A stretch of DNA of 59,592 nt, filler included, from Platydemus manokwari (taxonomy: Eukaryota): assembly GCA_037951405.1 (NCBI GenBank). It is 6 parts of 6 records of this genome, joined end to end, with 100 filler letters (N's around TTAATTAATTAA, not from the genome) between each part and the next. Parts side by side here need not be neighbours in the genome. Positions count along the whole stretch, not along the records: positions 9,334 to 19,454 come from JBBMOY011166435.1; 5 more parts are not named here. One strand, 5' to 3'. The translations under genes and the position numbers were made by a program. Shown here piece after piece: positions 9,334 through 19,454 of this stretch. The notes under the pieces are model-generated. The model did not search any database, had not been told where the DNA came from, and saw only the letters and a list, made by a program, of their open reading frames with translations. Numbering within the stretch: position 1 is the stretch's first letter; each line of letters opens with the position of its first letter.

Positions 9334-12312
9334 TTAATCAGTTATACTAATAATTCAACAATAATAATTGGGAAAACGCCTTAATGTATACTAATTAAGA
9401 CCGGGTTAAATATCTTGTCGACCAGTATACATTGAAATTCAGGAAATCATTGGCAGAGGACTGGCCTAACAACTTTACAAACGAAACAGTAGATGAAATG
9501 TTTAACAGAAACTATGAATTCATTCTTTGTGTCTGCACAATTAAATCACCAAGGAACCCATACTTGGGTAGGGCCAATGATGAAAAAAGAAGTGAGACTG
9601 AACTGAAATTAAGGAGACTGCCTTTGAATTAGCCACGTAATGCACAAAGGTTGACTGTCGACCTACTCAAAACGACTTTGAAATACATTTCGAGAAAAAA
9701 CAGAAGCAAAATGCAGACCTTCCTGATTGCGAAGGATCGCGTACGAGAGCATGCAAAAATTATTGTTCACTAAAGAAAGTTACTGAAAGGGGTCAGAACT
9801 ATGACTTCAGCAGAATAGAATCAGAAACAATTTATACAAACCTTTGCAAAAAGGACCGAAGTGCTCCTGGAAAAAACAAAATCATACACTATATTTTCAC
9901 AAAATGTCTAGATAACCAAGAAATACCAGAGGAATGGAAAAAATATACATCATTAATGATACCAAAATCCATGAAAGAAAGTCACCATCCTCAAATAAGC
10001 TCTTGGTGCCCTATTGCTCTGCTCAACTGCAGCTATAAAATTTTCACAACTATTCTGTGCAAACAACTGAAGAATAGGATTGATGAAAACAACTTAATAT
10101 ATCCACTCCAGAACAGACTAGGTTCAAATGACGGATGTGCCAAACAAAACTTTTTACCTCGAGCCATTATAGAAGAACACAGTAAGAAAAATATCAATAA
10201 TGTTCACATTGGATTCTTAGACATCGAAGAAGCCTTTCCTTCATTAGATCTTGAAGCGATGTTCACAATCCTTGCGCATATCGGACTGACTTAAATTGCC
10301 ATCAAAATCATAAGATGTCTCTGCATAACCTGCCAAACTTCTCTTAAATGCGGAGATTATGAAACGAAGCAAATTTAAATTGATAAAGGGGTACAACAGG
10401 GCTGCCCAATCTAGATGCTTTTATTCAACATAGCCATCAATCCAATCTTGGTACAAACGGACAACTGTCTTATTGGAGGCCTGGTAATTGTAAATCATAG
10501 AACTGCATGCTTTGCCTATGCAGATGACATAGCAATTATTGCGAAAAAAATGGATGCCAAATGATGATCAATGAAACATTGGGTTCCAACTTAGTTTCAA
10601 GTTCAAACCCTCCAAATGTGGGCACTTCCATAATCAAAGAGCAAGTATTAACGCGGAGGAACTCCTGATCTACAATGAGAAAATTCCTACAATCAGTATA
10701 GAGAGCCCTATCGCTATCTAAGAGTGAACTTCTCTTTGAAGTTACATAATACAACAAAAGGAAATTTCATTGACATGGAAACTCTGATGAATAAACTGGA
10801 AAAATGCATTTTATTTCCATGACAGAAGCTAAGGGCCTTTGATTTGTTCGTACACACCAAAGTGACATTCTACATGAGAAATTACTGTCACTTATAGTAG
10901 ATTAGTGCAGTTCGATGTGATAATAAGAAAATATCTGAAAAAAATCCTTGGCGTACCAAAATTTTGCTCATCGAATTACCTCTACTAAACAAAATCAAAT
11001 GGTGGTTGTGGACTAAGAAGTATGACAGAGGAGTACATAATACAATCGATCACCCACGCATATTATCTATTAACGAGTAAACATGAAATGATTGGGATGT
11101 CGTCCATACACTTCTTTTAAAAAAGTACTGGATTGAATAATCAAGCTTCGTCAATCGAGGAATTATTAAAATGGGTCAATTCGCATATTCTACCAAATGA
11201 AAGACACAAAACATGTGGGGTAAAATAAGAGAGAGCATTAAAAATGCCGCAGAGAAAACATAAATCACTTTTTCCTTCATTATTATCAACGGTGAGATAA
11301 TGCCTAGAGTTCAATAAAGCTTTACAATCAATGGTTCTCATTACGAAAGGAATGCCGAAGTGAAATCAAAGAAAATCAAACAAAAGTCAAAACTGCTAGG
11401 ACAATGTTTTGTACGATCTTACCAATTAAACTGGACGAATCAAATCAGAAATAAACACCATAGCAGCTATTCAGAAGCTATTAGTCCAATGTGGTCAAAA
11501 GTAGTTGAATTCAGATTTATTTATGACGCATGGACGGACAACCTTTCCACTTTGAATACAAAGTACACGAGAGGAATGGCATGCAGAAAATGTTTATACT
11601 AAGTGGAATCCCAAACACATGTTTTCACCTGGTGCAAACCATATCACTTTTTGTACTCTATTGGCACAACAGAACCATGGATATATTGGCCAAGGAAATT
11701 GTTAACAATATGGATTACAGAGTCTTTGAAGAGAAAGAAGGTCAATTCACGGAATCGAAATTAAGGGTAGATCTTCAACTAATAAATGATCCAAAATCCA
11801 CGATCATCCTAGTCAATATAAAATACCCCATGGACGAATCTGCTTTAATGGTTGAAACAGCTCAAGAGAATACAGAAAAATACGCAGATCTATGAAATGC
11901 GATCAAAAAAGCGGCCGACTAGACTGTGAAACTGTTCACTTTTGTTGTAGGAGTTCTCAGAACTTGGCAAACACAGACGAACGACACGGTCCTAAAGAAA
12001 TTAAGGATGAAAAAACGATAAATAAAATAGCTCTTGTATGCATAAAGTCGAATATAAATACGAGCTATCTGTAATGGAAGTTCCATACTGGAAATAGGAC
12101 AGCAACAAAGACATCCTTAAAAATAATGGAAGATGGTTTCCAAGACAACATCGACTAGATGGCGGAGACATTGAATGAAATGTTGAATTGATTGCATGAT
12201 TGAACTGGCGAACTGTGGCAACATTGGTCGATCGAAAGAAAGAACCATGTACATACCACATTTTAATGTATAGGTATCTCGAATATTAATGTTTATAAAT
12301 AAATATTATTAG
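9334..12312 (+). mobile_element. Decayed non-LTR retrotransposon, R2 superfamily with restriction-like endonuclease (NeSL/R5/Utopia-like)
   Basis: Ordered RT motifs across frameshifts and stops: SAPGKN (~9860), IPEEWKK (~9925), SWCPIALLNCSYKIFT, LDIEEAFPSL, GVQQGCP (10388), AYADDI (10514), ILFP*QKL (LxPWQK-like), GGCGL (~11002). Then CRKC...ESQTH zinc knuckle (~11582), LRVDL...VNIKYPMD...EKYADL endonuclease, 3' UTR and AATAAA (12298-12303). Confidence 0.9.
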
Positions 12313-15300
12313 TATTAAAATTAATGAATTCATTTTATTGAAATACTTATTCACAGATAGACAACACTTACTATAACTTTTGAAGCTTAATTTTTTACAA
12401 ATTTAGTTATTTTCACTTAAATTTAATATTTGTCCTTTCTAAATTATTCTTGGTTTATTTAATTTCATTAATCCATTAGTTAATATCAAATAATATTATC
12501 CAAATATATTTTACCAACATTTATGAGTTGTTTATTTGATAATTGGCTAGGAGACCTATCTCGGTATACCAATGACCCATCTTTATTTCGATGAATATTT
12601 TCATCGTCCTTTAGAAAATGACTATTTGGGATTCCGGATGATTTCTGAAAGATTTAACTGGAAGTTAATCAATTTTATTTTATAAGCATTTTTATTAAAA
12701 TATTTTGTTTATCACTGATCAACTAAAATATAAGCAAATGTTTGTCGACCTGTTGCTTTGAAATCTGACCATATGATCCATCTCTGCTTAAATTATCTCT
12801 ATTGGAACGCAAACTACCATCTTCATTGAATCTTTGATCATGTGAAAGATCATGAATTTTCTAAATTATTAAAATTACTAAATTAATTTCATTGAAATAC
12901 TTATTCACAGACATTATGCTATTTAACAGAAGCCCCTATCGCCTTCGTCAATTAATTTACTATGTTTCAAATCTAATTATTTTTCTATTCAAAACTTTTC
13001 TTAATTTTACTTTTATTCATATTATGACATCTTTTATCAAATATCTTTATCAATAACGGCTCTATATTTCATTCATCTTCATCAATTTAACTTGATCACT
13101 TACATAATAAAATTCATATTTAGATCGATAAAATCGTACACTATACAATGCTAAACCCAACTTCTAATCAGATTGCCAACCTTCCATTGATGCTATTGAA
13201 CACCTTCCTGCGTTAAACAGTTACAATGACAGAAAAATCCAATCTTATCTATATCTTAATAACCATTTTCGGCGAAATACTTTTAATTAATCGATCTTAG
13301 CTACATCTCTTGATCATGATAAGGAAAGATTCAATAAAAATCAATATTTAGTTTTAAAGTCGACTTGAGGAATTTTCTCAATTATGCTGATTTTAAATAA
13401 ATTTTGAATGAATGGTCAAATAAAATGTTATGATTTATTAATTTCAACTTGATATTTTCTTTTTTAACTTTTAATAAAATTAGTTAAAGAAAAAATCATT
13501 AGTTTTATTTTTCCAAAACAAGTGCATGAAGTATTTTAATAATTTTGATAATTAAGATATTTTTCATTTGAAAATATTATTAAAATCGCGGATTTCCATG
13601 GGAATTATTTCAATTCAATTCATTGCGAGATATATATCAGAAAATCAATAAAATCACAGAATTGACTTTATCGAGTCAGTCAAAATAGTATAATTGATTT
13701 TGATTATGAAATATATTAGATATATATCAAACTAACATTCGTCAACTGTTTGTGTGTTATTTGATTTGGAGTTCTTTCTCGGTATACCAATGACCCATCT
13801 TTATTTCGATGAATATTTGCATCTTCCTCCAGAAATTGACTATTTGGAATTCCGGATGATTTCTGAAAGATTTAATTGGAAATTAATCCATTTCATTTTA
13901 TAAGCATTTTTATTAAAATATTTTGTTTATCACTGATCAACTAAAGTATAAGCAAACGTTCGTCGACCTGTTGCTTTGAAATCTGACCATATGATCCATC
14001 TCGGCTTAAATTATCTCTGTTAGAACGCAAACTTCCATCTTCATTGAATCTTTGTTCATTTGAAAGATCATGAATTTTCTAAATTATTAAAATTACTAAA
14101 TTAATTTCATTGAAATACTTATTCACAGATAGACAATACTTATAATCACTTTGGAAATTTACTTTTTTACAAATTTAGTCATTTTCCTTTACATTTAATA
14201 CTTATCCTTTGTAAATCATTCTTGGTTAATTTAATTTCTCTAATCCATTAGTTAATACCAAATAATATTATCCAAATATATTTTACCAACATTTATGAGT
14301 TGTTTATTTGATAATTGGCTAGGAGACCTTTCTCGGTATACCAATGAACCATCTTTATTTCGATGAATATTTGCATCTTCCTCCAGAAATTGACTATTTG
14401 GGATTCCGGATGATTTCTGAAAAATTTAACTGGAAATTAATCCACTTTATTTTATAAGCATTTTTATTTAAATATTTTGTTTATCACTGATCAACTAAAG
14501 TATAAGCATATGTTTGTCGACCTGTTGCTTTGAAATCTGATCATATGATCCATCTCTGCTTAAATTATCTCTATTGGAACGCAAACTACCATCTTCATTG
14601 AATCTTTGATCATTTGAAAGATCATGAATTTTCTAAATTATTAAATTAGTTAAATCAATCTCGATGAAATATTTATTCACAGATATACAACACTTATTAT
14701 ATCTTTGGAAATTTACCTTTTTACAAATTTAGTTATTTTTTACTTTGCATTTAATATTTATCCTTTGTAAATTATTCTTGCTTTATTTAATTCATGTATT
14801 TTAATAACCATCTTCGGCGAAATACTTCTAATTAATCGATCTTAGCCACATCTCTTGATCATGATAAGGAAAGATTCAATAAAATTCACAGACATTATGC
14901 TATTTAACAGAAGCCCCTATCGCCTTCGTCAATTAATTTACTATGTTTCAAATCTAATTATTTTTCTATTCAAAACTTTTCTTAATTTTACTTTTATTCA
15001 TATTATGACATCTTTTATCAAATATCTTTATCAATAACGGCTCTATATTTCATTCATCTTCATCAATTTAACTTGATCACTTACATAATAAAATTCATAT
15101 TTAGATCGATAAAATCGTACACTATACAATGCTAAACCCAACTTCTAATCAGATTGCCAACCTTCCATTGATGCTATTGAACACCTTCCTGCGTTAAACA
15201 GTTACAATGACAGAAAAATCCAATCTTATCTATATCTTAATAACCATTTTCGGCGAAATACTTTTAATTAATCGATCTTAGCTACATCTCTTGATCATGA

Positions 15301-17043
15301 TAAGGAAAGATTCAATAAAAATCAATATTTAGTTTTAAAGTCGACTTGAGGAATTTTCTCAATTATGCTGATTTTAAATAAATTTTGAATGAATGGTCAA
15401 ATAAAATGTTATGATTTATTAATTTCAACTTGATATTTTCTTTTTTAACTTTTAATAAAATTAGTTAAAGAAAAAATCATTAGTTTTATTTTTCCAAAAC
15501 AAGTGCATGAAGTATTTTAATAATTTTGATAATTAAGATATTTTTCATTTGAAAATATTATTAAAATCGCGGATTTCCATGGGAATTATTTCAATTCAAT
15601 TCATTGCGAGATATATATCAGAAAATCAATAAAATCACAGAATTGACTTTATCGAGTCAGTCAAAATAGTATAATTGATTTTGATTATGAAATATATTAG
15701 ATATATATCAAACTAACATTCGTCAACTGTTTGTGTGTTATTTGATTTGGAGTTCTTTCTCGGTATACCAATGACCCATCTTTATTTCGATGAATATTTG
15801 CATCTTCCTCCAGAAATTGACTATTTGGAATTCCGGATGATTTCTGAAAGATTTAATTGGAAATTAATCCATTTCATTTTATAAGCATTTTTATTAAAAT
15901 ATTTTGTTTATCACTGATCAACTAAAGTATAAGCAAACGTTCGTCGACCTGTTGCTTTGAAATCTGACCATATGATCCATCTCGGCTTAAATTATCTCTG
16001 TTAGAACGCAAACTTCCATCTTCATTGAATCTTTGTTCATTTGAAAGATCATGAATTTTCTAAATTATTAAAATTACTAAATTAATTTCATTGAAATACT
16101 TATTCACAGATAGACAATACTTATAATCACTCTGGAAATTTACTTTTTTACAAATTTAGTCATTTTACTTTACATCGAATATTTATCCTTTGTAAATCAT
16201 TCTTGGTTTATTTAATTTCTCTAATCCATTATTTAATATCAAATAATATTATCCAAATATATTTTACCAACATTTATGAGTTGTTTATTTGATATTTGGC
16301 TAGGAGATCTTTCTCGGTATACCAATGACCCATCTTTATTTCGATGAATATTTGCATCTTCCTCTAGAAAATGACTATTTGGGATTCCGGATGATTTCTG
16401 AAAGATTTAACTGGAAGTTAATCCATTTTATTTTATAAGCATTTTTATTAAAATATTTTGTTTATCACTGATCAACTAAAGTATAAGCAAATGTTTGTCG
16501 ACCTGTTGCTTTGAAATCTGACCATATGATCCATCTCGGCTTAAATTATCTCTATTAGAACGCAAACTACTATCTTCATTGAATCTTTGATCATGTGAAA
16601 GATCATGAATTTTCTAAATTATTAAAATTACTAAATTGTAAATCATGCTTGGTTTATTTAATTTCTCTAATCCATTATTTAATACCAAATAATATTATCC
16701 AAATATATTTTACCAACATTTATGAGTTGTTTATTTGATATTTGGCTAGAAGATCTTTCTCGTTTTACCAATGAGCCATATTTGTTGGGATGAATGTTTT
16801 CATCTTCATTAATAAGTTGACTATTTGGAACTTGGTGTGATTTCTGAATATCAAGCTTATGTCAGTTGTTTCGTTTCATACAATTGAGTATTATAATTAC
16901 CAACAGTCTAAACTTACATCTGTAACTTGTTTATTTGATTCTTGGCTTCGGGATCTTTTTGTGCTTAATAAGGAGTCATGTATGTTTAAATGCACGCTTA
17001 TATCATCATTCAAACGCTGATCATTTGATACGCCAGAAAATTG
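12313..17043. repeat. Tandem array, ~554-bp unit with a 1981-bp higher-order period
   Basis: Unit recurs with a 554-bp period (14078 to 14632, 16059 to 16613); ~12904-14151 is near-identical to ~14885-16132. Confidence 0.92.
12519..17043 (-). CDS. Unrecognised repeat protein encoded by 12 tandem symmetric (phase-0) exons; start and stop not identified
   Basis: Exons 5'->3': 17043-16918, 16843-16718, 16613-16503, 16397-16272, 16059-15949, 15843-15718, 14632-14522, 14416-14291, 14078-13968, 13862-13737, 12860-12750, 12644-12519. All are AG|...|GT bounded, 126 or 111 nt and stop-free. Type A: KIHDLSNDQRFNEDGSLRSNRDNLSRDGSYGQISKQQ; type B: KSSGIPNSQFLEEDANIHRNKDGSLVYRERSPSQLSNKQLIN. Several inter-copy differences are synonymous. 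Confidence 0.72.
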
Positions 17044-17113
17044 CTAAATGGTATTGATATTTATGTTAAAGCTATTTATGATCAATATTAAATAAAGAAT
17101 TTTTTTTGAATAT

Positions 17114-17470
17114 TTAACCCCTGTACAATTTATATTATTACCTAAAGTTTAATTGTTGTTAAAAATGGCTTTATAATTTTTCAACATAAACGATTTTGCA
17201 TAAATATTAAAATCTTCACGGCGACTTATGGCTTTTATATAATCAATTTCTTTATCTTTATTTGGAGCTTCCTCTATTATTCGTTTCTTGTTAACATTGC
17301 GAGTTTATATTAAGAGTTTAATAGTCACAAATATGATAGATTACACTTATTTCATTTCTTAAACTCAATTTATGTCAAGCAAAAAATGTGATTTGCTGAT
17401 TTAAATTATATTTGGAAAAATTTTATTTTTAATGAATTTTAAATTAAAATTAATCGGTTAAAGGGGTTAA
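17114..17470. mobile_element. Possible TTAA-flanked piggyBac-like MITE
   Basis: TTAA-CCCCT... at 17114 and ...AGGGG-TTAA ending at 17470; the inverted match is short. Confidence 0.35.
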
Positions 17471-17599
17471 TTTCTCCTTTAACAAAGTATCATGTTTAAT
17501 ATTTTTATTAAAGATTATGATTATTTGAATCGAGTCCACAACGTGAGACTTTGAGCTACTGAGGAGTACATAATCTAACTAAATTCAGTAAAACGTGAA

Positions 17600-19400
17600 A
17601 ATTACTATTAATCAGAAAAATCTAGGTTTAGAAACCGTTTCAACTGCTATTTTCCGCGAAACTAATAAAAATTAAATTTATAATGCTTTGTCAATTGGTC
17701 AATTCGTTAGAACATATTTTGAAGAGTATTCCTACAAGGCTGGCAAACCAAATTATGAACTTAAACCCAGGAGAAACTCCAGCGAGAAGTATTCAAAATC
17801 TACTTTACAAATCACCTGAGAAAAATCTAAACATACTCGACAAAGAACACACCCTGAAAGGTTAGACAATTACGACGAGTATTCAAAAAATGTTGACCAG
17901 CCTCACAATGACCACAATCCAAAGAGAAATGTTAACAGAAGATCACAACCCCCTAGCTTCGAAGCTAGAAGAAATGTTACGCTGAATGGTCGCAAACAAA
18001 TTAATCGGTTGGACAGAGTTTTGGAGAAATTCTTATCGAATTACCTGATTGAAAATACGGATGGATACTCTCACTTAGAGAACAGACAATACCATCTCAA
18101 TGCAAAACTGTCCTATGCATATGTTGTAAAATCTGTAAAATGGAAGGATGGCTATAGTAAAAAAACTCAAGCATACGGAGATCAAGCGATAACAGTTACA
18201 GCATGAATTCAAACAAGGAATCAAATCCAGTTACAATCAACGATAAAGGTTTCAAAACAATAAGGAGGAAAACACATCGCGAATTTTAAATCAGAAAATC
18301 GGAAAACGAACATAAGCTCATCAAGTATTGACTATACAAGAAAAATTGAAGAAAAAATGATTTGAATTCCAAGAACAAACGGAGACCCCTTATTTCTGCT
18401 ACTATTAACTCCGACAACTCATGGTCTCTTAGCATTGACATCGGATCGCTAAAAGTTGAACAGCATCTCAAAACAACTTTAGATAAATTCAGAAAAATCC
18501 TTGGAGAAATGGAAAAAGACAACAGAATGAAGCTAACAAACATGTAAACAAGTGCTAAGGGTACCATCTGTAACCCTAATGATATCCCATCATTAAAGAA
18601 TAACAACGCACTATTGCAATTCAAAAAAATCTTTGTAATTATTGGACATGGTTACCAATAAAATTATGAAAGCTCTAATTAATATATTTCGGCAAACAAA
18701 TAGTCAATAATCAATTATGCATAGGCATAGATGTCATAATCATCAGAAGAAAATGTAAACAAAATATTTCACAATAATCGATTAACCAATTAACAGGGAT
18801 GGGACCGGCAACTGCAGAAAATCAAGGTGGCCTTATGTAAAAAAGAATTTTAATGTCGAAAATGTCTAGTGTTCAGAATTGATGATATTAAAGATATTCT
18901 GGAATTGCTGTTGTTCCATTATTTCAAAAACATGGAAATTATCTTTTGTCCACTTCTGATGAATTCTAAAAGCTGGATTCTAGTGATAATATTTATAACA
19001 AAAAAATAAATTCAATTGCTAGACCCTAAGGGTGATGTTATAAATAATGAAAAAACAAAATTCCTCAATAATTTAAATAGAAATATTTCCATAATGATAT
19101 GGAACAAAGAAGGTCTTAAAGAAAAGGAGTTTACAAAATCCAGAGTGCTACCGTGCAATTTCGGGGAAAGCGGGCCACTAGTATTTGTATTTATGCTGAA
19201 CATCAGCCATAATTTTTAACTGATCAGAACAAATATCAAGACAATAAAGAGAAAACCAAATACGGCGATCTTCGTACATGAATGGAAGGTCAAGAGAGGG
19301 GAACAATTAATGTGCACTCCTGATGATTGCCTTGAAGATATACTGGTCGACAAGATATTTAATCCGATTGTAATTTTATTATAGATTTTTTATTATTCTT
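17600..19400 (+). mobile_element. Degenerate A-rich coding-like relic, possibly a LINE fragment
   Basis: Strong A skew on + and a chain of broken + strand ORFs (17683, 18009, 18362, 19016); no diagnostic motif confidently identified. Confidence 0.3.
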
Positions 19401-19454
19401 TTTTCTATATAAATTTAAGTGAAATCGATTGAAATGTTGTTTATTCTTTAAACT

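What the first reader, a model, noticed from the sequence alone, without database searches (positions are those of the whole stretch)
12519..17043. A 'satellite' that is really a cassette array of 12 symmetric coding exons for an unrecognised repeat protein
Seen: on the minus strand each 554-bp unit holds a 111-nt exon A (tttag|AAAATT...CAG|gtcgac) and a 126-nt exon B (tttcag|AAATCA...AAT|gttggt or gttagt). A diverged 126-nt exon leads the array (QFSGVSNDQRLNDD...KQVTD|gtaagt). All 12 exons are phase 0, stop-free and constant in length, while the introns carry indels (e.g. the B-to-A intron is 212 nt vs 104 nt). Differences among A copies include GGT/GGA, TCC/TCT, AAT/AAC and AGA/CGA, all synonymous. 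The exon types appear related (KIHDLSNDQRFNED / KSSGIPNSQFLEED / QFSGVSNDQRLNDD). Together they give ~479 aa of hydrophilic S/N/D/R-rich repeats with recurring RxxS-type motifs (RDGS, RERSPS). Inference: any exon can be skipped without frameshift, so the locus could be a modular isoform generator reminiscent of schistosome micro-exon genes but with larger units, or a length-tunable disordered scaffold. Caveats: the A donor (CAG|GTCGAC) is weak on the intron side, and no start or stop exon was found.
Basis: partly seen in the sequence, partly recalled or inferred. Interest (0 to 1): 0.82.

Follow-up and report, generated by a model that had tools for sequence, protein, structure and literature searches.

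The report
Tandem in-frame exon array, orphan repeat protein
A 4.5-kb repeat array on the minus strand is most likely the internal part of an unannotated gene in which each 37-42-residue repeat has its own in-frame exon, a known kind of gene architecture, but no transcript or relative could be found to prove it.

Summary
Each is stop-free, phase 0, 126 or 111 nt long and bordered by AG and GT. Together they encode 479 aa.

Stop-freeness alone is weak here, because open frames of 30-65 codons are common on both strands of the array. Four other lines favour coding:
- L, A and B resemble each other (z 3.4-18.6), while the spacers beside the different block types share nothing (z 1.6 or less).
- Changes among the young copies are 13 synonymous, 17 non-synonymous and 0 stops (null mean 7.3 synonymous, P=0.012). 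They fall 9/4/17 by codon position, and this is the only one of six frames without stops.
- Blocks are 33% GC and spacers 22-23%. GC by codon position is 44/34/21%.
- The A/B length difference is in frame.

Against this:
- Ten of the 12 donors are non-consensus (GTCGAC, GTTGGT or GTTAGT).
- The A-B intron is as conserved as the exons.
- Four of the 12 exons lie in a 100% identical 1.25-kb duplicate.
- A retrotransposon abuts the 3' end.
- No RNA run, homologue, start exon or stop exon was found.

Verdict: probably a real orphan repeat-protein gene fragment (about 0.6). It resembles the SmPoMuc and titin-PEVK exon arrays and is not a micro-exon gene. The isoform-generator idea is untested.

The parts
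16918..17043 (-). Leader exon L, 126 nt. Acceptor tttag|CAA, donor GAT|gtaagt, the only consensus donor in the array. It encodes QFSGVSNDQRLNDD...KQVTD.
   Evidence: It is 62% identical to B at the nucleotide level without gaps (z=14.5).
16718..16843 (-). Exon B0, 126 nt. It is a mosaic. The 5' ~75 nt are an older diverged B, and the 3' part plus the downstream intron are ~99% identical to B1.
   Evidence: Similarity to B1 begins 5 nt before the acceptor (TTCAG).
16503..16613 (-). Exon A, copy 1, 111 nt. Donor CAG|gtcgac.
16272..16397 (-). Exon B, copy 1, 126 nt. Donor AAT|gttggt.
15949..16059 (-). Exon A, copy 2. It is identical to the copy at 13968-14078.
15718..15843 (-). Exon B, variant type (...RERTPNQITHKQLTN, donor gttagt). 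It is identical to the copy at 13737-13862.
   Evidence: The 3' third has diverged in frame. Similarity fades after the donor hexamer and the downstream intron is unrelated (z=0.1).
14633..15717 (-). Long spacer or intron of 1085 nt, with an extra 92-nt repeat (14797-14888).
14522..14632 (-). Exon A, copy 3.
14291..14416 (-). Exon B, copy 3.
13968..14078 (-). Exon A, copy 4, an exact duplicate of copy 2.
13737..13862 (-). Exon B, variant type, an exact duplicate of 15718-15843.
12861..13736 (-). Long spacer or intron of 876 nt.
12750..12860 (-). Exon A, copy 5.
12519..12644 (-). Exon B, copy 5, the last exon in the piece.
12313..12518 (-). Last, partial B-to-A intron. The array stops just where the next A acceptor should be.
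12903..14150 (.). A 1,248-bp segment 100% identical to 14884-16131 (offset 1981). It is either a very recent higher-order duplication or an assembly artefact.
9334..12300 (+). Context: a degenerate non-LTR retrotransposon with a broken reverse-transcriptase frame. It abuts the 3' end of the array and runs to the edge of the piece.
   Evidence: RVT_1 match. Frame breaks and a YADD motif. 53% identity to a reverse-transcriptase fragment from a metagenome.

Best explanation
The array is the internal, repeat-encoding part of a protein-coding gene on the minus strand. Each 37-42-residue repeat has its own phase 0-0 exon.

Proposed history (inferred):
- An ancestral 126-nt exon duplicated long ago into the L, B and A types.
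- A lost 6 nt in frame and now uses a donor 9 nt upstream, also in frame.
- A two-exon A+B module of 554 bp then multiplied by unequal crossing-over, followed by a 1,981-bp higher-order unit.
- Because every exon is symmetric, gain or loss of units keeps the reading frame.

The product would be a very hydrophilic, charge-balanced S/N/D/Q/R-rich chain with no confident fold.

Shown here: the anatomy, the conservation of the exons only between old copies, and coding-type substitution and composition patterns.
Inferred: that splicing occurs at these sites, that the gene is expressed, and what the product is like.
Not in the piece: the first and last exons. A retrotransposon lies where the gene should continue 3'.
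For: Anatomy:
- There are 12 stop-free, length-constant blocks, each bordered by AG and GT.

Conservation:
- The block types are homologous. L/B has z=14.5, L/B0 18.6, L/A 7.6 and A/B 3.4. Peptide identity to L is 36-43%.
- The spacers that flank different block types have no detectable similarity (z from -0.9 to 1.6).
- Similarity of B0 to B1 starts at the acceptor. Similarity of the variant B to B1 fades after the donor.

Substitution pattern among the distinct young copies:
- There are 13 synonymous, 17 non-synonymous and 0 stop-creating changes. The null mean is 7.3 synonymous (P=0.012).
- By codon position the changes fall 9/4/17 (P=0.014).
- Of the six frames this is the only one free of stops. 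Only one antisense frame, which carries stops, matches its synonymous count.

Older copies under a neutral placement of the same changes:
- The chance of staying stop-free is 0.08-0.09 for L, 0.21 for B0 and 0.41 for the variant B.
- Amino-acid identity exceeds the null, with P of 0.09, 0.055 and 0.005-0.016.

Composition and length:
- Exon GC is 33.3% and intron GC 22-23%. GC at codon positions 1/2/3 is 44/34/21%, so the third position matches the introns.
- The A/B length difference is 6+9 nt, both multiples of three.

Other points:
- No decayed or frameshifted copy lies in the piece.
- Summed contig depth over the units is only about 5-11 times that of the unique flank, so this is not a high-copy satellite (a rough measure).
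- SmPoMuc genes have ~1-kb tandem genomic repeats that each carry one 27-bp exon, with introns more than 94% identical (PMC2576457). Conserved introns between units therefore do not argue against coding.
Against: - No transcript evidence exists. The only run that holds the stretch is genomic contigs and shows no spliced joints.
- No relative was found in 1.84 billion representative proteins. The five hits are unrelated repeat proteins. The word search, Pfam, the ESM Atlas and two metagenome pattern scans also found nothing.
- Ten of the 12 donors are non-consensus, with a pyrimidine at +3: GTCGAC, GTTGGT or GTTAGT.
- Among the young copies the exons are hardly more conserved than the A-B intron: 7-10% against 10.5% variable columns.
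- The older comparisons show no third-position bias: L/B1 gives 18/13/17 and B0/B1 gives 9/4/9.
- Open frames of this size are common throughout the array.
- Independent evidence is thin. There are only about 4 distinct A and 6 distinct B/L sequences, and all P values are about 0.01 rather than overwhelming.
- No start exon or stop exon was found, and the array is bounded by a retrotransposon.
Confidence: 0.6

Rival explanations
1. The array is a relic. The blocks were once coding exons of a repeat-protein gene, but the locus is now a truncated, unexpressed pseudogene fragment. Its exon-intron unit keeps being amplified by unequal crossing-over like a local minisatellite.
For: - The array ends exactly at a retrotransposon, where the next A acceptor should be.
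- No start exon or stop exon is present.
- Among young copies the exons diverge about as fast as the A-B intron.
- The A exon lost the ancestral donor and depends on a poor GTCGAC site.
- No expression data exist.
- SmPoMuc group 4 genes with their own exon-2 type are regarded as probable pseudogenes.
Against: - No copy has a stop or frameshift.
- The youngest changes still show an excess of synonymous and third-position changes.
- A retrotransposon inside an intron does not inactivate a gene, and the piece simply ends within it.
Confidence: 0.2
2. The array is a non-coding tandem repeat (a local satellite or TE-associated array). The open frames and the AG/GT borders are chance features, copied along with the unit.
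For: - Open frames of 30-65 codons are frequent in all frames of this AT-rich array.
- The units are non-independent copies, and 1.25 kb is an exact duplicate.
- The donors are weak.
- No homologue or RNA was found.
- The array is flanked by a retrotransposon.
Against: - It does not explain why only the blocks stay alignable between old copies while the spacers are unalignable.
- It does not explain why indels between block types are 6 and 9 nt.
- It does not explain why GC is 33% in blocks and 22% in spacers, with a 44/34/21 gradient by frame position.
- It does not explain why changes favour synonymous positions in the one stop-free frame.
- Contig depth suggests few copies.
Confidence: 0.15
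3. Part of the array is an assembly artefact. The 1,981-bp higher-order repeat may have been written twice, so the true locus has about 8 exons rather than 12.
For: - Positions 12903-14150 and 14884-16131 are 100% identical, while neighbouring units differ by 5-10%.
- Short-read contigs are fragmented here. None spans the array, and several contigs join array positions in other arrangements (tables 5c, 7, 8).
Against: - Very recent unequal crossing-over gives the same picture.
- The two copies have different right-hand junctions, 12861-12902 against 14633-14883. That argues for two real places.
- This rival changes only the copy number, not the nature of the locus.
Confidence: 0.25

Closest known systems
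SmPoMuc polymorphic mucin genes of Schistosoma mansoni (tandemly repeated exon 2; PMC2576457)
   Same: A coding repeat is built from tandem genomic units that each carry a short in-frame exon plus its introns. The introns are nearly as conserved between units as the exons. The number of units changes by recombination. Some family members are pseudogenes.
   Different: SmPoMuc units are ~1 kb with a single 27-bp exon (9 aa) and are separated by GA microsatellites. Here the unit is 554 bp with two related exons of 111 and 126 nt and has no microsatellite. There is no sequence similarity, the composition is not mucin-like (T 1.7%, P 2.5%), and expression is unknown.
Titin PEVK region (PMC6469411)
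   Same: It is a disordered repeat region in which each repeat has its own small symmetric exon. It expands and contracts by exon duplication and loss, and LINE insertions are implicated.
   Different: PEVK is rich in P/E/V/K, whereas this chain is rich in S/N/D/Q/R. PEVK lies in a huge conserved muscle gene with known flanking domains, and none are seen here. No sequence similarity was found.
Schistosome micro-exon genes (MEGs; PMC10526429)
   Same: The internal exons are symmetric (multiples of three), so skipping keeps the frame. The products are orphan and low-complexity, and the genomic setting is AT-rich.
   Different: MEG exons are 3-81 bp with long introns of up to 5 kb. Here the exons are 111-126 nt and most introns are 74-212 nt. 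MEG exons within a gene are not tandem copies of each other. No signal-peptide exon was found here, and there is no sequence similarity.
Ordinary non-coding satellite or minisatellite DNA
   Same: It is a head-to-tail array with a 554-bp period and a higher-order unit, homogenised between copies, AT-rich and next to transposon sequence.
   Different: The array has low copy number. It holds conserved islands with a three-base substitution and composition pattern, an intact frame, and AG/GT borders at conserved positions.

Membership tests
Micro-exon gene (MEG) family | Most of the coding sequence lies in micro-exons of 3-81 bp. | tested here: not met
   All 12 exons are 111 or 126 nt. The range is taken from PMC10526429.
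Micro-exon gene (MEG) family | Symmetric internal exons (length a multiple of three, same phase at both ends). | tested here: met
   All exons are phase 0-0.
Micro-exon gene (MEG) family | Long introns between exons (up to 5 kb). | tested here: not met
   Nine of the 11 introns are 74-212 nt. The other two are 876 and 1085 nt.
Micro-exon gene (MEG) family | Secreted product, with a signal-peptide exon. | not testable with these tools
   No first exon is in the piece. Hydrophobic ATG frames upstream (18567, 19092) lie in T-rich antisense sequence and are expected by composition.
Tandem exon-repeat genes of the SmPoMuc type | Tandem genomic units that each contain in-frame exon(s) and flanking introns. 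| tested here: met
   The 554-bp A+B units and the 1,981-bp higher-order unit.
Tandem exon-repeat genes of the SmPoMuc type | The intronic part of the units is highly conserved between units. | tested here: met
   The A-B intron has 11 of 105 variable columns and no indels.
Tandem exon-repeat genes of the SmPoMuc type | The repeated exons are present in mature transcripts, in variable number. | not testable with these tools
   No RNA run holds the stretch. The only run is genomic contigs.
Tandem exon-repeat genes of the SmPoMuc type | Sequence homology to SmPoMuc, or mucin-like composition. | tested here: not met
   The profile search found no true relative. T is 1.7% and P 2.5% of residues.
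Titin PEVK | P/E/V/K-rich repeats of ~28 residues. | tested here: not met
   P, E, V and K together are 78 of 479 residues. S, N, D, Q and R dominate.
Non-coding satellite DNA | No frame-dependent substitution or composition pattern, and uniform decay over the whole unit. | tested here: not met
   Synonymous excess P=0.012. Changes by codon position 9/4/17. GC by codon position 44/34/21. The blocks are alignable between old copies and the spacers are not.
Non-coding satellite DNA | High copy number in the genome. | tested here: inconclusive
   Summed contig depth over the units is about 5-11 times that of the unique flanks. The tool warns that depth is not a copy number.

The most novel reading that the evidence does not exclude
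The locus encodes a lineage-restricted, intrinsically disordered protein. Its 12 or more interchangeable phase-0 exons would be combinatorially skipped, or vary in number between individuals, giving a family of length and sequence variants from one gene. That would be a larger-exon counterpart of the variation-generating systems of parasites (MEGs, SmPoMucs).
Probability: 0.1. Interest if true: 0.6.

Novelty: new member of a known kind. Interest (0 to 1): 0.35.

Why it matters
If real, the array is an orphan gene that automated annotation would miss, because it looks like a satellite and has no homologue. It would also be a clean example of how a disordered repeat protein grows by duplicating exon-intron modules without breaking the frame. 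The architecture itself is already known from SmPoMuc, titin PEVK and collagen-type exon arrays, so the value lies mainly in annotating this poorly sampled organism. Combinatorial splicing or copy-number variation would raise the interest. Nothing here makes a long-standing question testable.

Tried and rejected
- The RNA evidence search returned one run only. It is genomic contigs, with no spliced joints, only a 62-nt skip inside a long spacer.
- A profile of the 12 exon peptides was searched against 1.84 billion representatives. The five hits (E from 2e-6 to 3e-4) are unrelated bacterial or other repeat proteins that score through many weak stretches, so I rejected them.
- Five further searches found nothing: the word search with the 57-aa B frame, Pfam on five exon peptides at E up to 10, the ESM Atlas, and two back-translated patterns against metagenome contigs.
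- Exact look-ups of two retrotransposon ORFs were not on record.
- I tried to place the organism through the reverse transcriptase. The single 53%-identical hit lies on an unnamed 1.7-kb metagenome contig, so there is no taxonomic information.
- Rfam found nothing in the piece.
- AlphaFold on one exon with the 12-row alignment gave pLDDT 58.5 and pTM 0.16, one low-confidence helix. This fits disorder but is not informative.
- An antisense-strand coding model is rejected. The antisense frame that shares the third positions has stops, and the open antisense frames put the variable sites at their second positions.
- An alternative B donor 4 nt downstream (TTG|GTAAAA) is rejected, because it puts the next A exon into a frame with an immediate stop (read from the sequence).
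Full report
**1. The observation**

- The leader L is 17043-16918 (126 nt).
- Six B blocks of 126 nt start at 16843, 16397, 15843, 14416, 13862 and 12644.
- Five A blocks of 111 nt start at 16613, 16059, 14632, 14078 and 12860.

Every block is stop-free in one phase. Each is directly preceded by AG: tttag for L and A, ttcag or tttcag for B. Each is directly followed by GT: gtaagt for L, gtcgac for A, and gttggt or gttagt for B. The blocks translate to 479 residues in total.

The spacers measure 74, 104, 105, 212, 105, 1085, 105, 212, 105, 876 and 105 nt. A profile made from the 12 peptides finds these 12 and nothing else in 9334-19454, whether intact or decayed.

**2.

- The 554-bp period is interrupted by two long spacers.
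- Positions 12903-14150 are 100% identical to 14884-16131, at an offset of 1981. Two A and two B exons are therefore exact duplicates. The array holds about four distinct A sequences and six distinct B/L sequences.
- The A-to-B intron is always 105 nt. It shows 11 variable columns in 105, against 8 in 111 for exon A. The contrast 'constant exons, indel-ridden introns' therefore holds only for the B-to-A spacer.
- Open frames of 30-65 codons are common on both strands of the array. Being stop-free is not beyond chance on its own.

**3. Is it coding?**

With no outside data, I tested the sequence against itself.

(a) Conserved islands. The block types are clearly homologous. Local alignment against shuffles gives z=14.5 for L/B, 18.6 for L/B0, 7.6 for L/A and 3.4 for A/B. 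Peptide identity to L is 36-43%. The spacers next to different block types share no detectable similarity (z from -0.9 to 1.6). The similarity of B0 to B1 begins 5 nt before the acceptor. The similarity of the variant B to B1 fades after the donor. Over the long term, then, only the blocks were kept.

(b) Substitution pattern. Among the distinct young copies the minimal changes are 13 synonymous, 17 non-synonymous and 0 stop-creating.
- Placing the same base changes at random gives a mean of 7.3 synonymous (P=0.012) and a 0.12 chance of no new stop.
- By codon position the changes fall 9/4/17 (P=0.014), while the A-B intron read in the same way gives 4/6/1.
- Of the six frames, this is the only one without stops. 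Only one antisense frame, which does contain stops, equals its synonymous count.

(c) Older copies. Under neutral placement of their differences, L would stay open with probability 0.08-0.09, B0 with 0.21 and the variant B with 0.41. Amino-acid identity exceeds the null, with P of 0.09, 0.055 and 0.005-0.016.

(d) Composition. Exons are 33.3% GC and introns 22-23%. GC at codon positions 1/2/3 is 44/34/21%, so the third position looks like intron sequence.

(e) Length changes. A differs from B by a 6-nt gap and by a donor that lies 9 nt upstream. Both are multiples of three.

Each test is only moderately significant, and the tests are not fully independent. They all point the same way, and the non-coding reading explains none of them.

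**4. What weakens the model**

- There is no evidence of expression. The only public run that holds the stretch is a genomic one kept as short contigs, and it shows no spliced joints.
- No relative exists in any library I could search.
- Ten of the 12 donors have a pyrimidine at +3. The A donor GTCGAC matches the consensus only at CAG|GT. The alignment with L suggests that A lost the ancestral donor and uses an upstream one.
- The young exons are barely more conserved than the A-B intron. SmPoMuc genes show the same behaviour, with intronic parts of the exon-2 units more than 94% identical (PMC2576457). This is therefore not decisive.
- The L/B and B0/B comparisons show no third-position bias. 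That fits saturation, relaxed constraint or diversifying change.
- L has an acceptor, so it is not a first exon, and no convincing upstream exon was found.
- At the 3' side the array stops at about 12313, exactly where the next A acceptor should be. There it meets a degenerate plus-strand non-LTR retrotransposon that runs to the edge of the piece.

**5. What it most likely is and how it works**

My best reading (about 0.6) is the internal part of an orphan gene for a repeat protein, with one repeat per symmetric exon. Growth would have been in steps: old duplications of a single 126-nt exon gave L, B and A, then the 554-bp A+B module was amplified, and then a 1,981-bp higher-order unit. Unequal crossing-over between the near-identical introns is the likely engine. 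Phase 0-0 symmetry means that each gain or loss keeps the frame.

The chain is strongly hydrophilic (GRAVY -1.1 to -1.7) and roughly charge-balanced. It is rich in S, N, D, Q and R and has no C, M or W. RxxS motifs recur, and each A repeat has one NLS sequon. A single repeat folds only at pLDDT 58.5, which fits disorder. Function is unknown; a flexible, possibly phosphorylated or secreted, length-variable spacer or scaffold is inference only. Exon skipping as an isoform generator is possible but untested.

**6. Rivals**

- A truncated, no longer expressed relic of such a gene (0.2).
- A non-coding local repeat with chance features (0.15).
- Independently of these, the exact 1.25-kb duplicate may be an assembly artefact (0.25). 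That would lower the exon count to about 8 without changing what the locus is.

**7. Comparison with what is known**

It works like the tandem exon-repeat genes. These include SmPoMuc exon 2 (~1-kb units, 27-bp exon, up to about 20 copies) and the PEVK exons of titin. It is not a member of either family, having no sequence similarity and a different composition. It is also not a micro-exon gene, whose exons are 3-81 bp with long introns (PMC10526429). Here the exons are 111-126 nt and most introns are short. If real, it is a new member of a known kind.

**8. Limits**

- The organism could not be identified. The reverse-transcriptase search gave one hit on an unnamed metagenome contig.
- The joined 479-aa product was never sent to any search or folding tool.

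Noticed in passing
window 9334-12300 (+): A degenerate non-LTR retrotransposon. It has a reverse-transcriptase domain (RVT_1) and a YADD motif near 10540, and its frame is broken by many stops and shifts. The best relative is a 215-aa fragment on a 1.7-kb ENA metagenome contig (53% identity). Its 3' end abuts the repeat array.
   Followed up: partly
window 12903-14150 and 14884-16131: A perfect (100%) 1,248-bp duplication at offset 1981, inside an array whose other units differ by 5-10%. It is either a very recent unequal crossover or an assembly duplication. The two copies have different junctions on one side, apparently at a shared CTGTGAAT microhomology.
   Followed up: partly
window 13252-13343, 14797-14888, 15233-15324: A 92-nt sequence occurs three times (95-100% identity) inside the long spacers. 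The extra copy at 14797-14888 accounts for part of the 1085 versus 876 nt length difference. The ~830-nt body of the long spacers has no similarity to the short introns and may be an inserted element.
   Followed up: no
window 17834-19454 (+): This stretch has higher GC (31-37%) and a strong excess of A over T on the plus strand, like the retrotransposon flank. It has no Pfam match and no similarity to 9334-12300. It may be another decayed mobile element, or an unrelated plus-strand gene, bounding the array upstream.
   Followed up: partly
window 12420/16442 and 16246/13680 (run X1 contigs): Short-read contigs join array positions in arrangements not present in the window, with 20-25 other letters between. 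Many loose ends sit at the borders of the long spacers. This suggests further or differently arranged copies of the unit in the sequenced individual(s).
   Followed up: no
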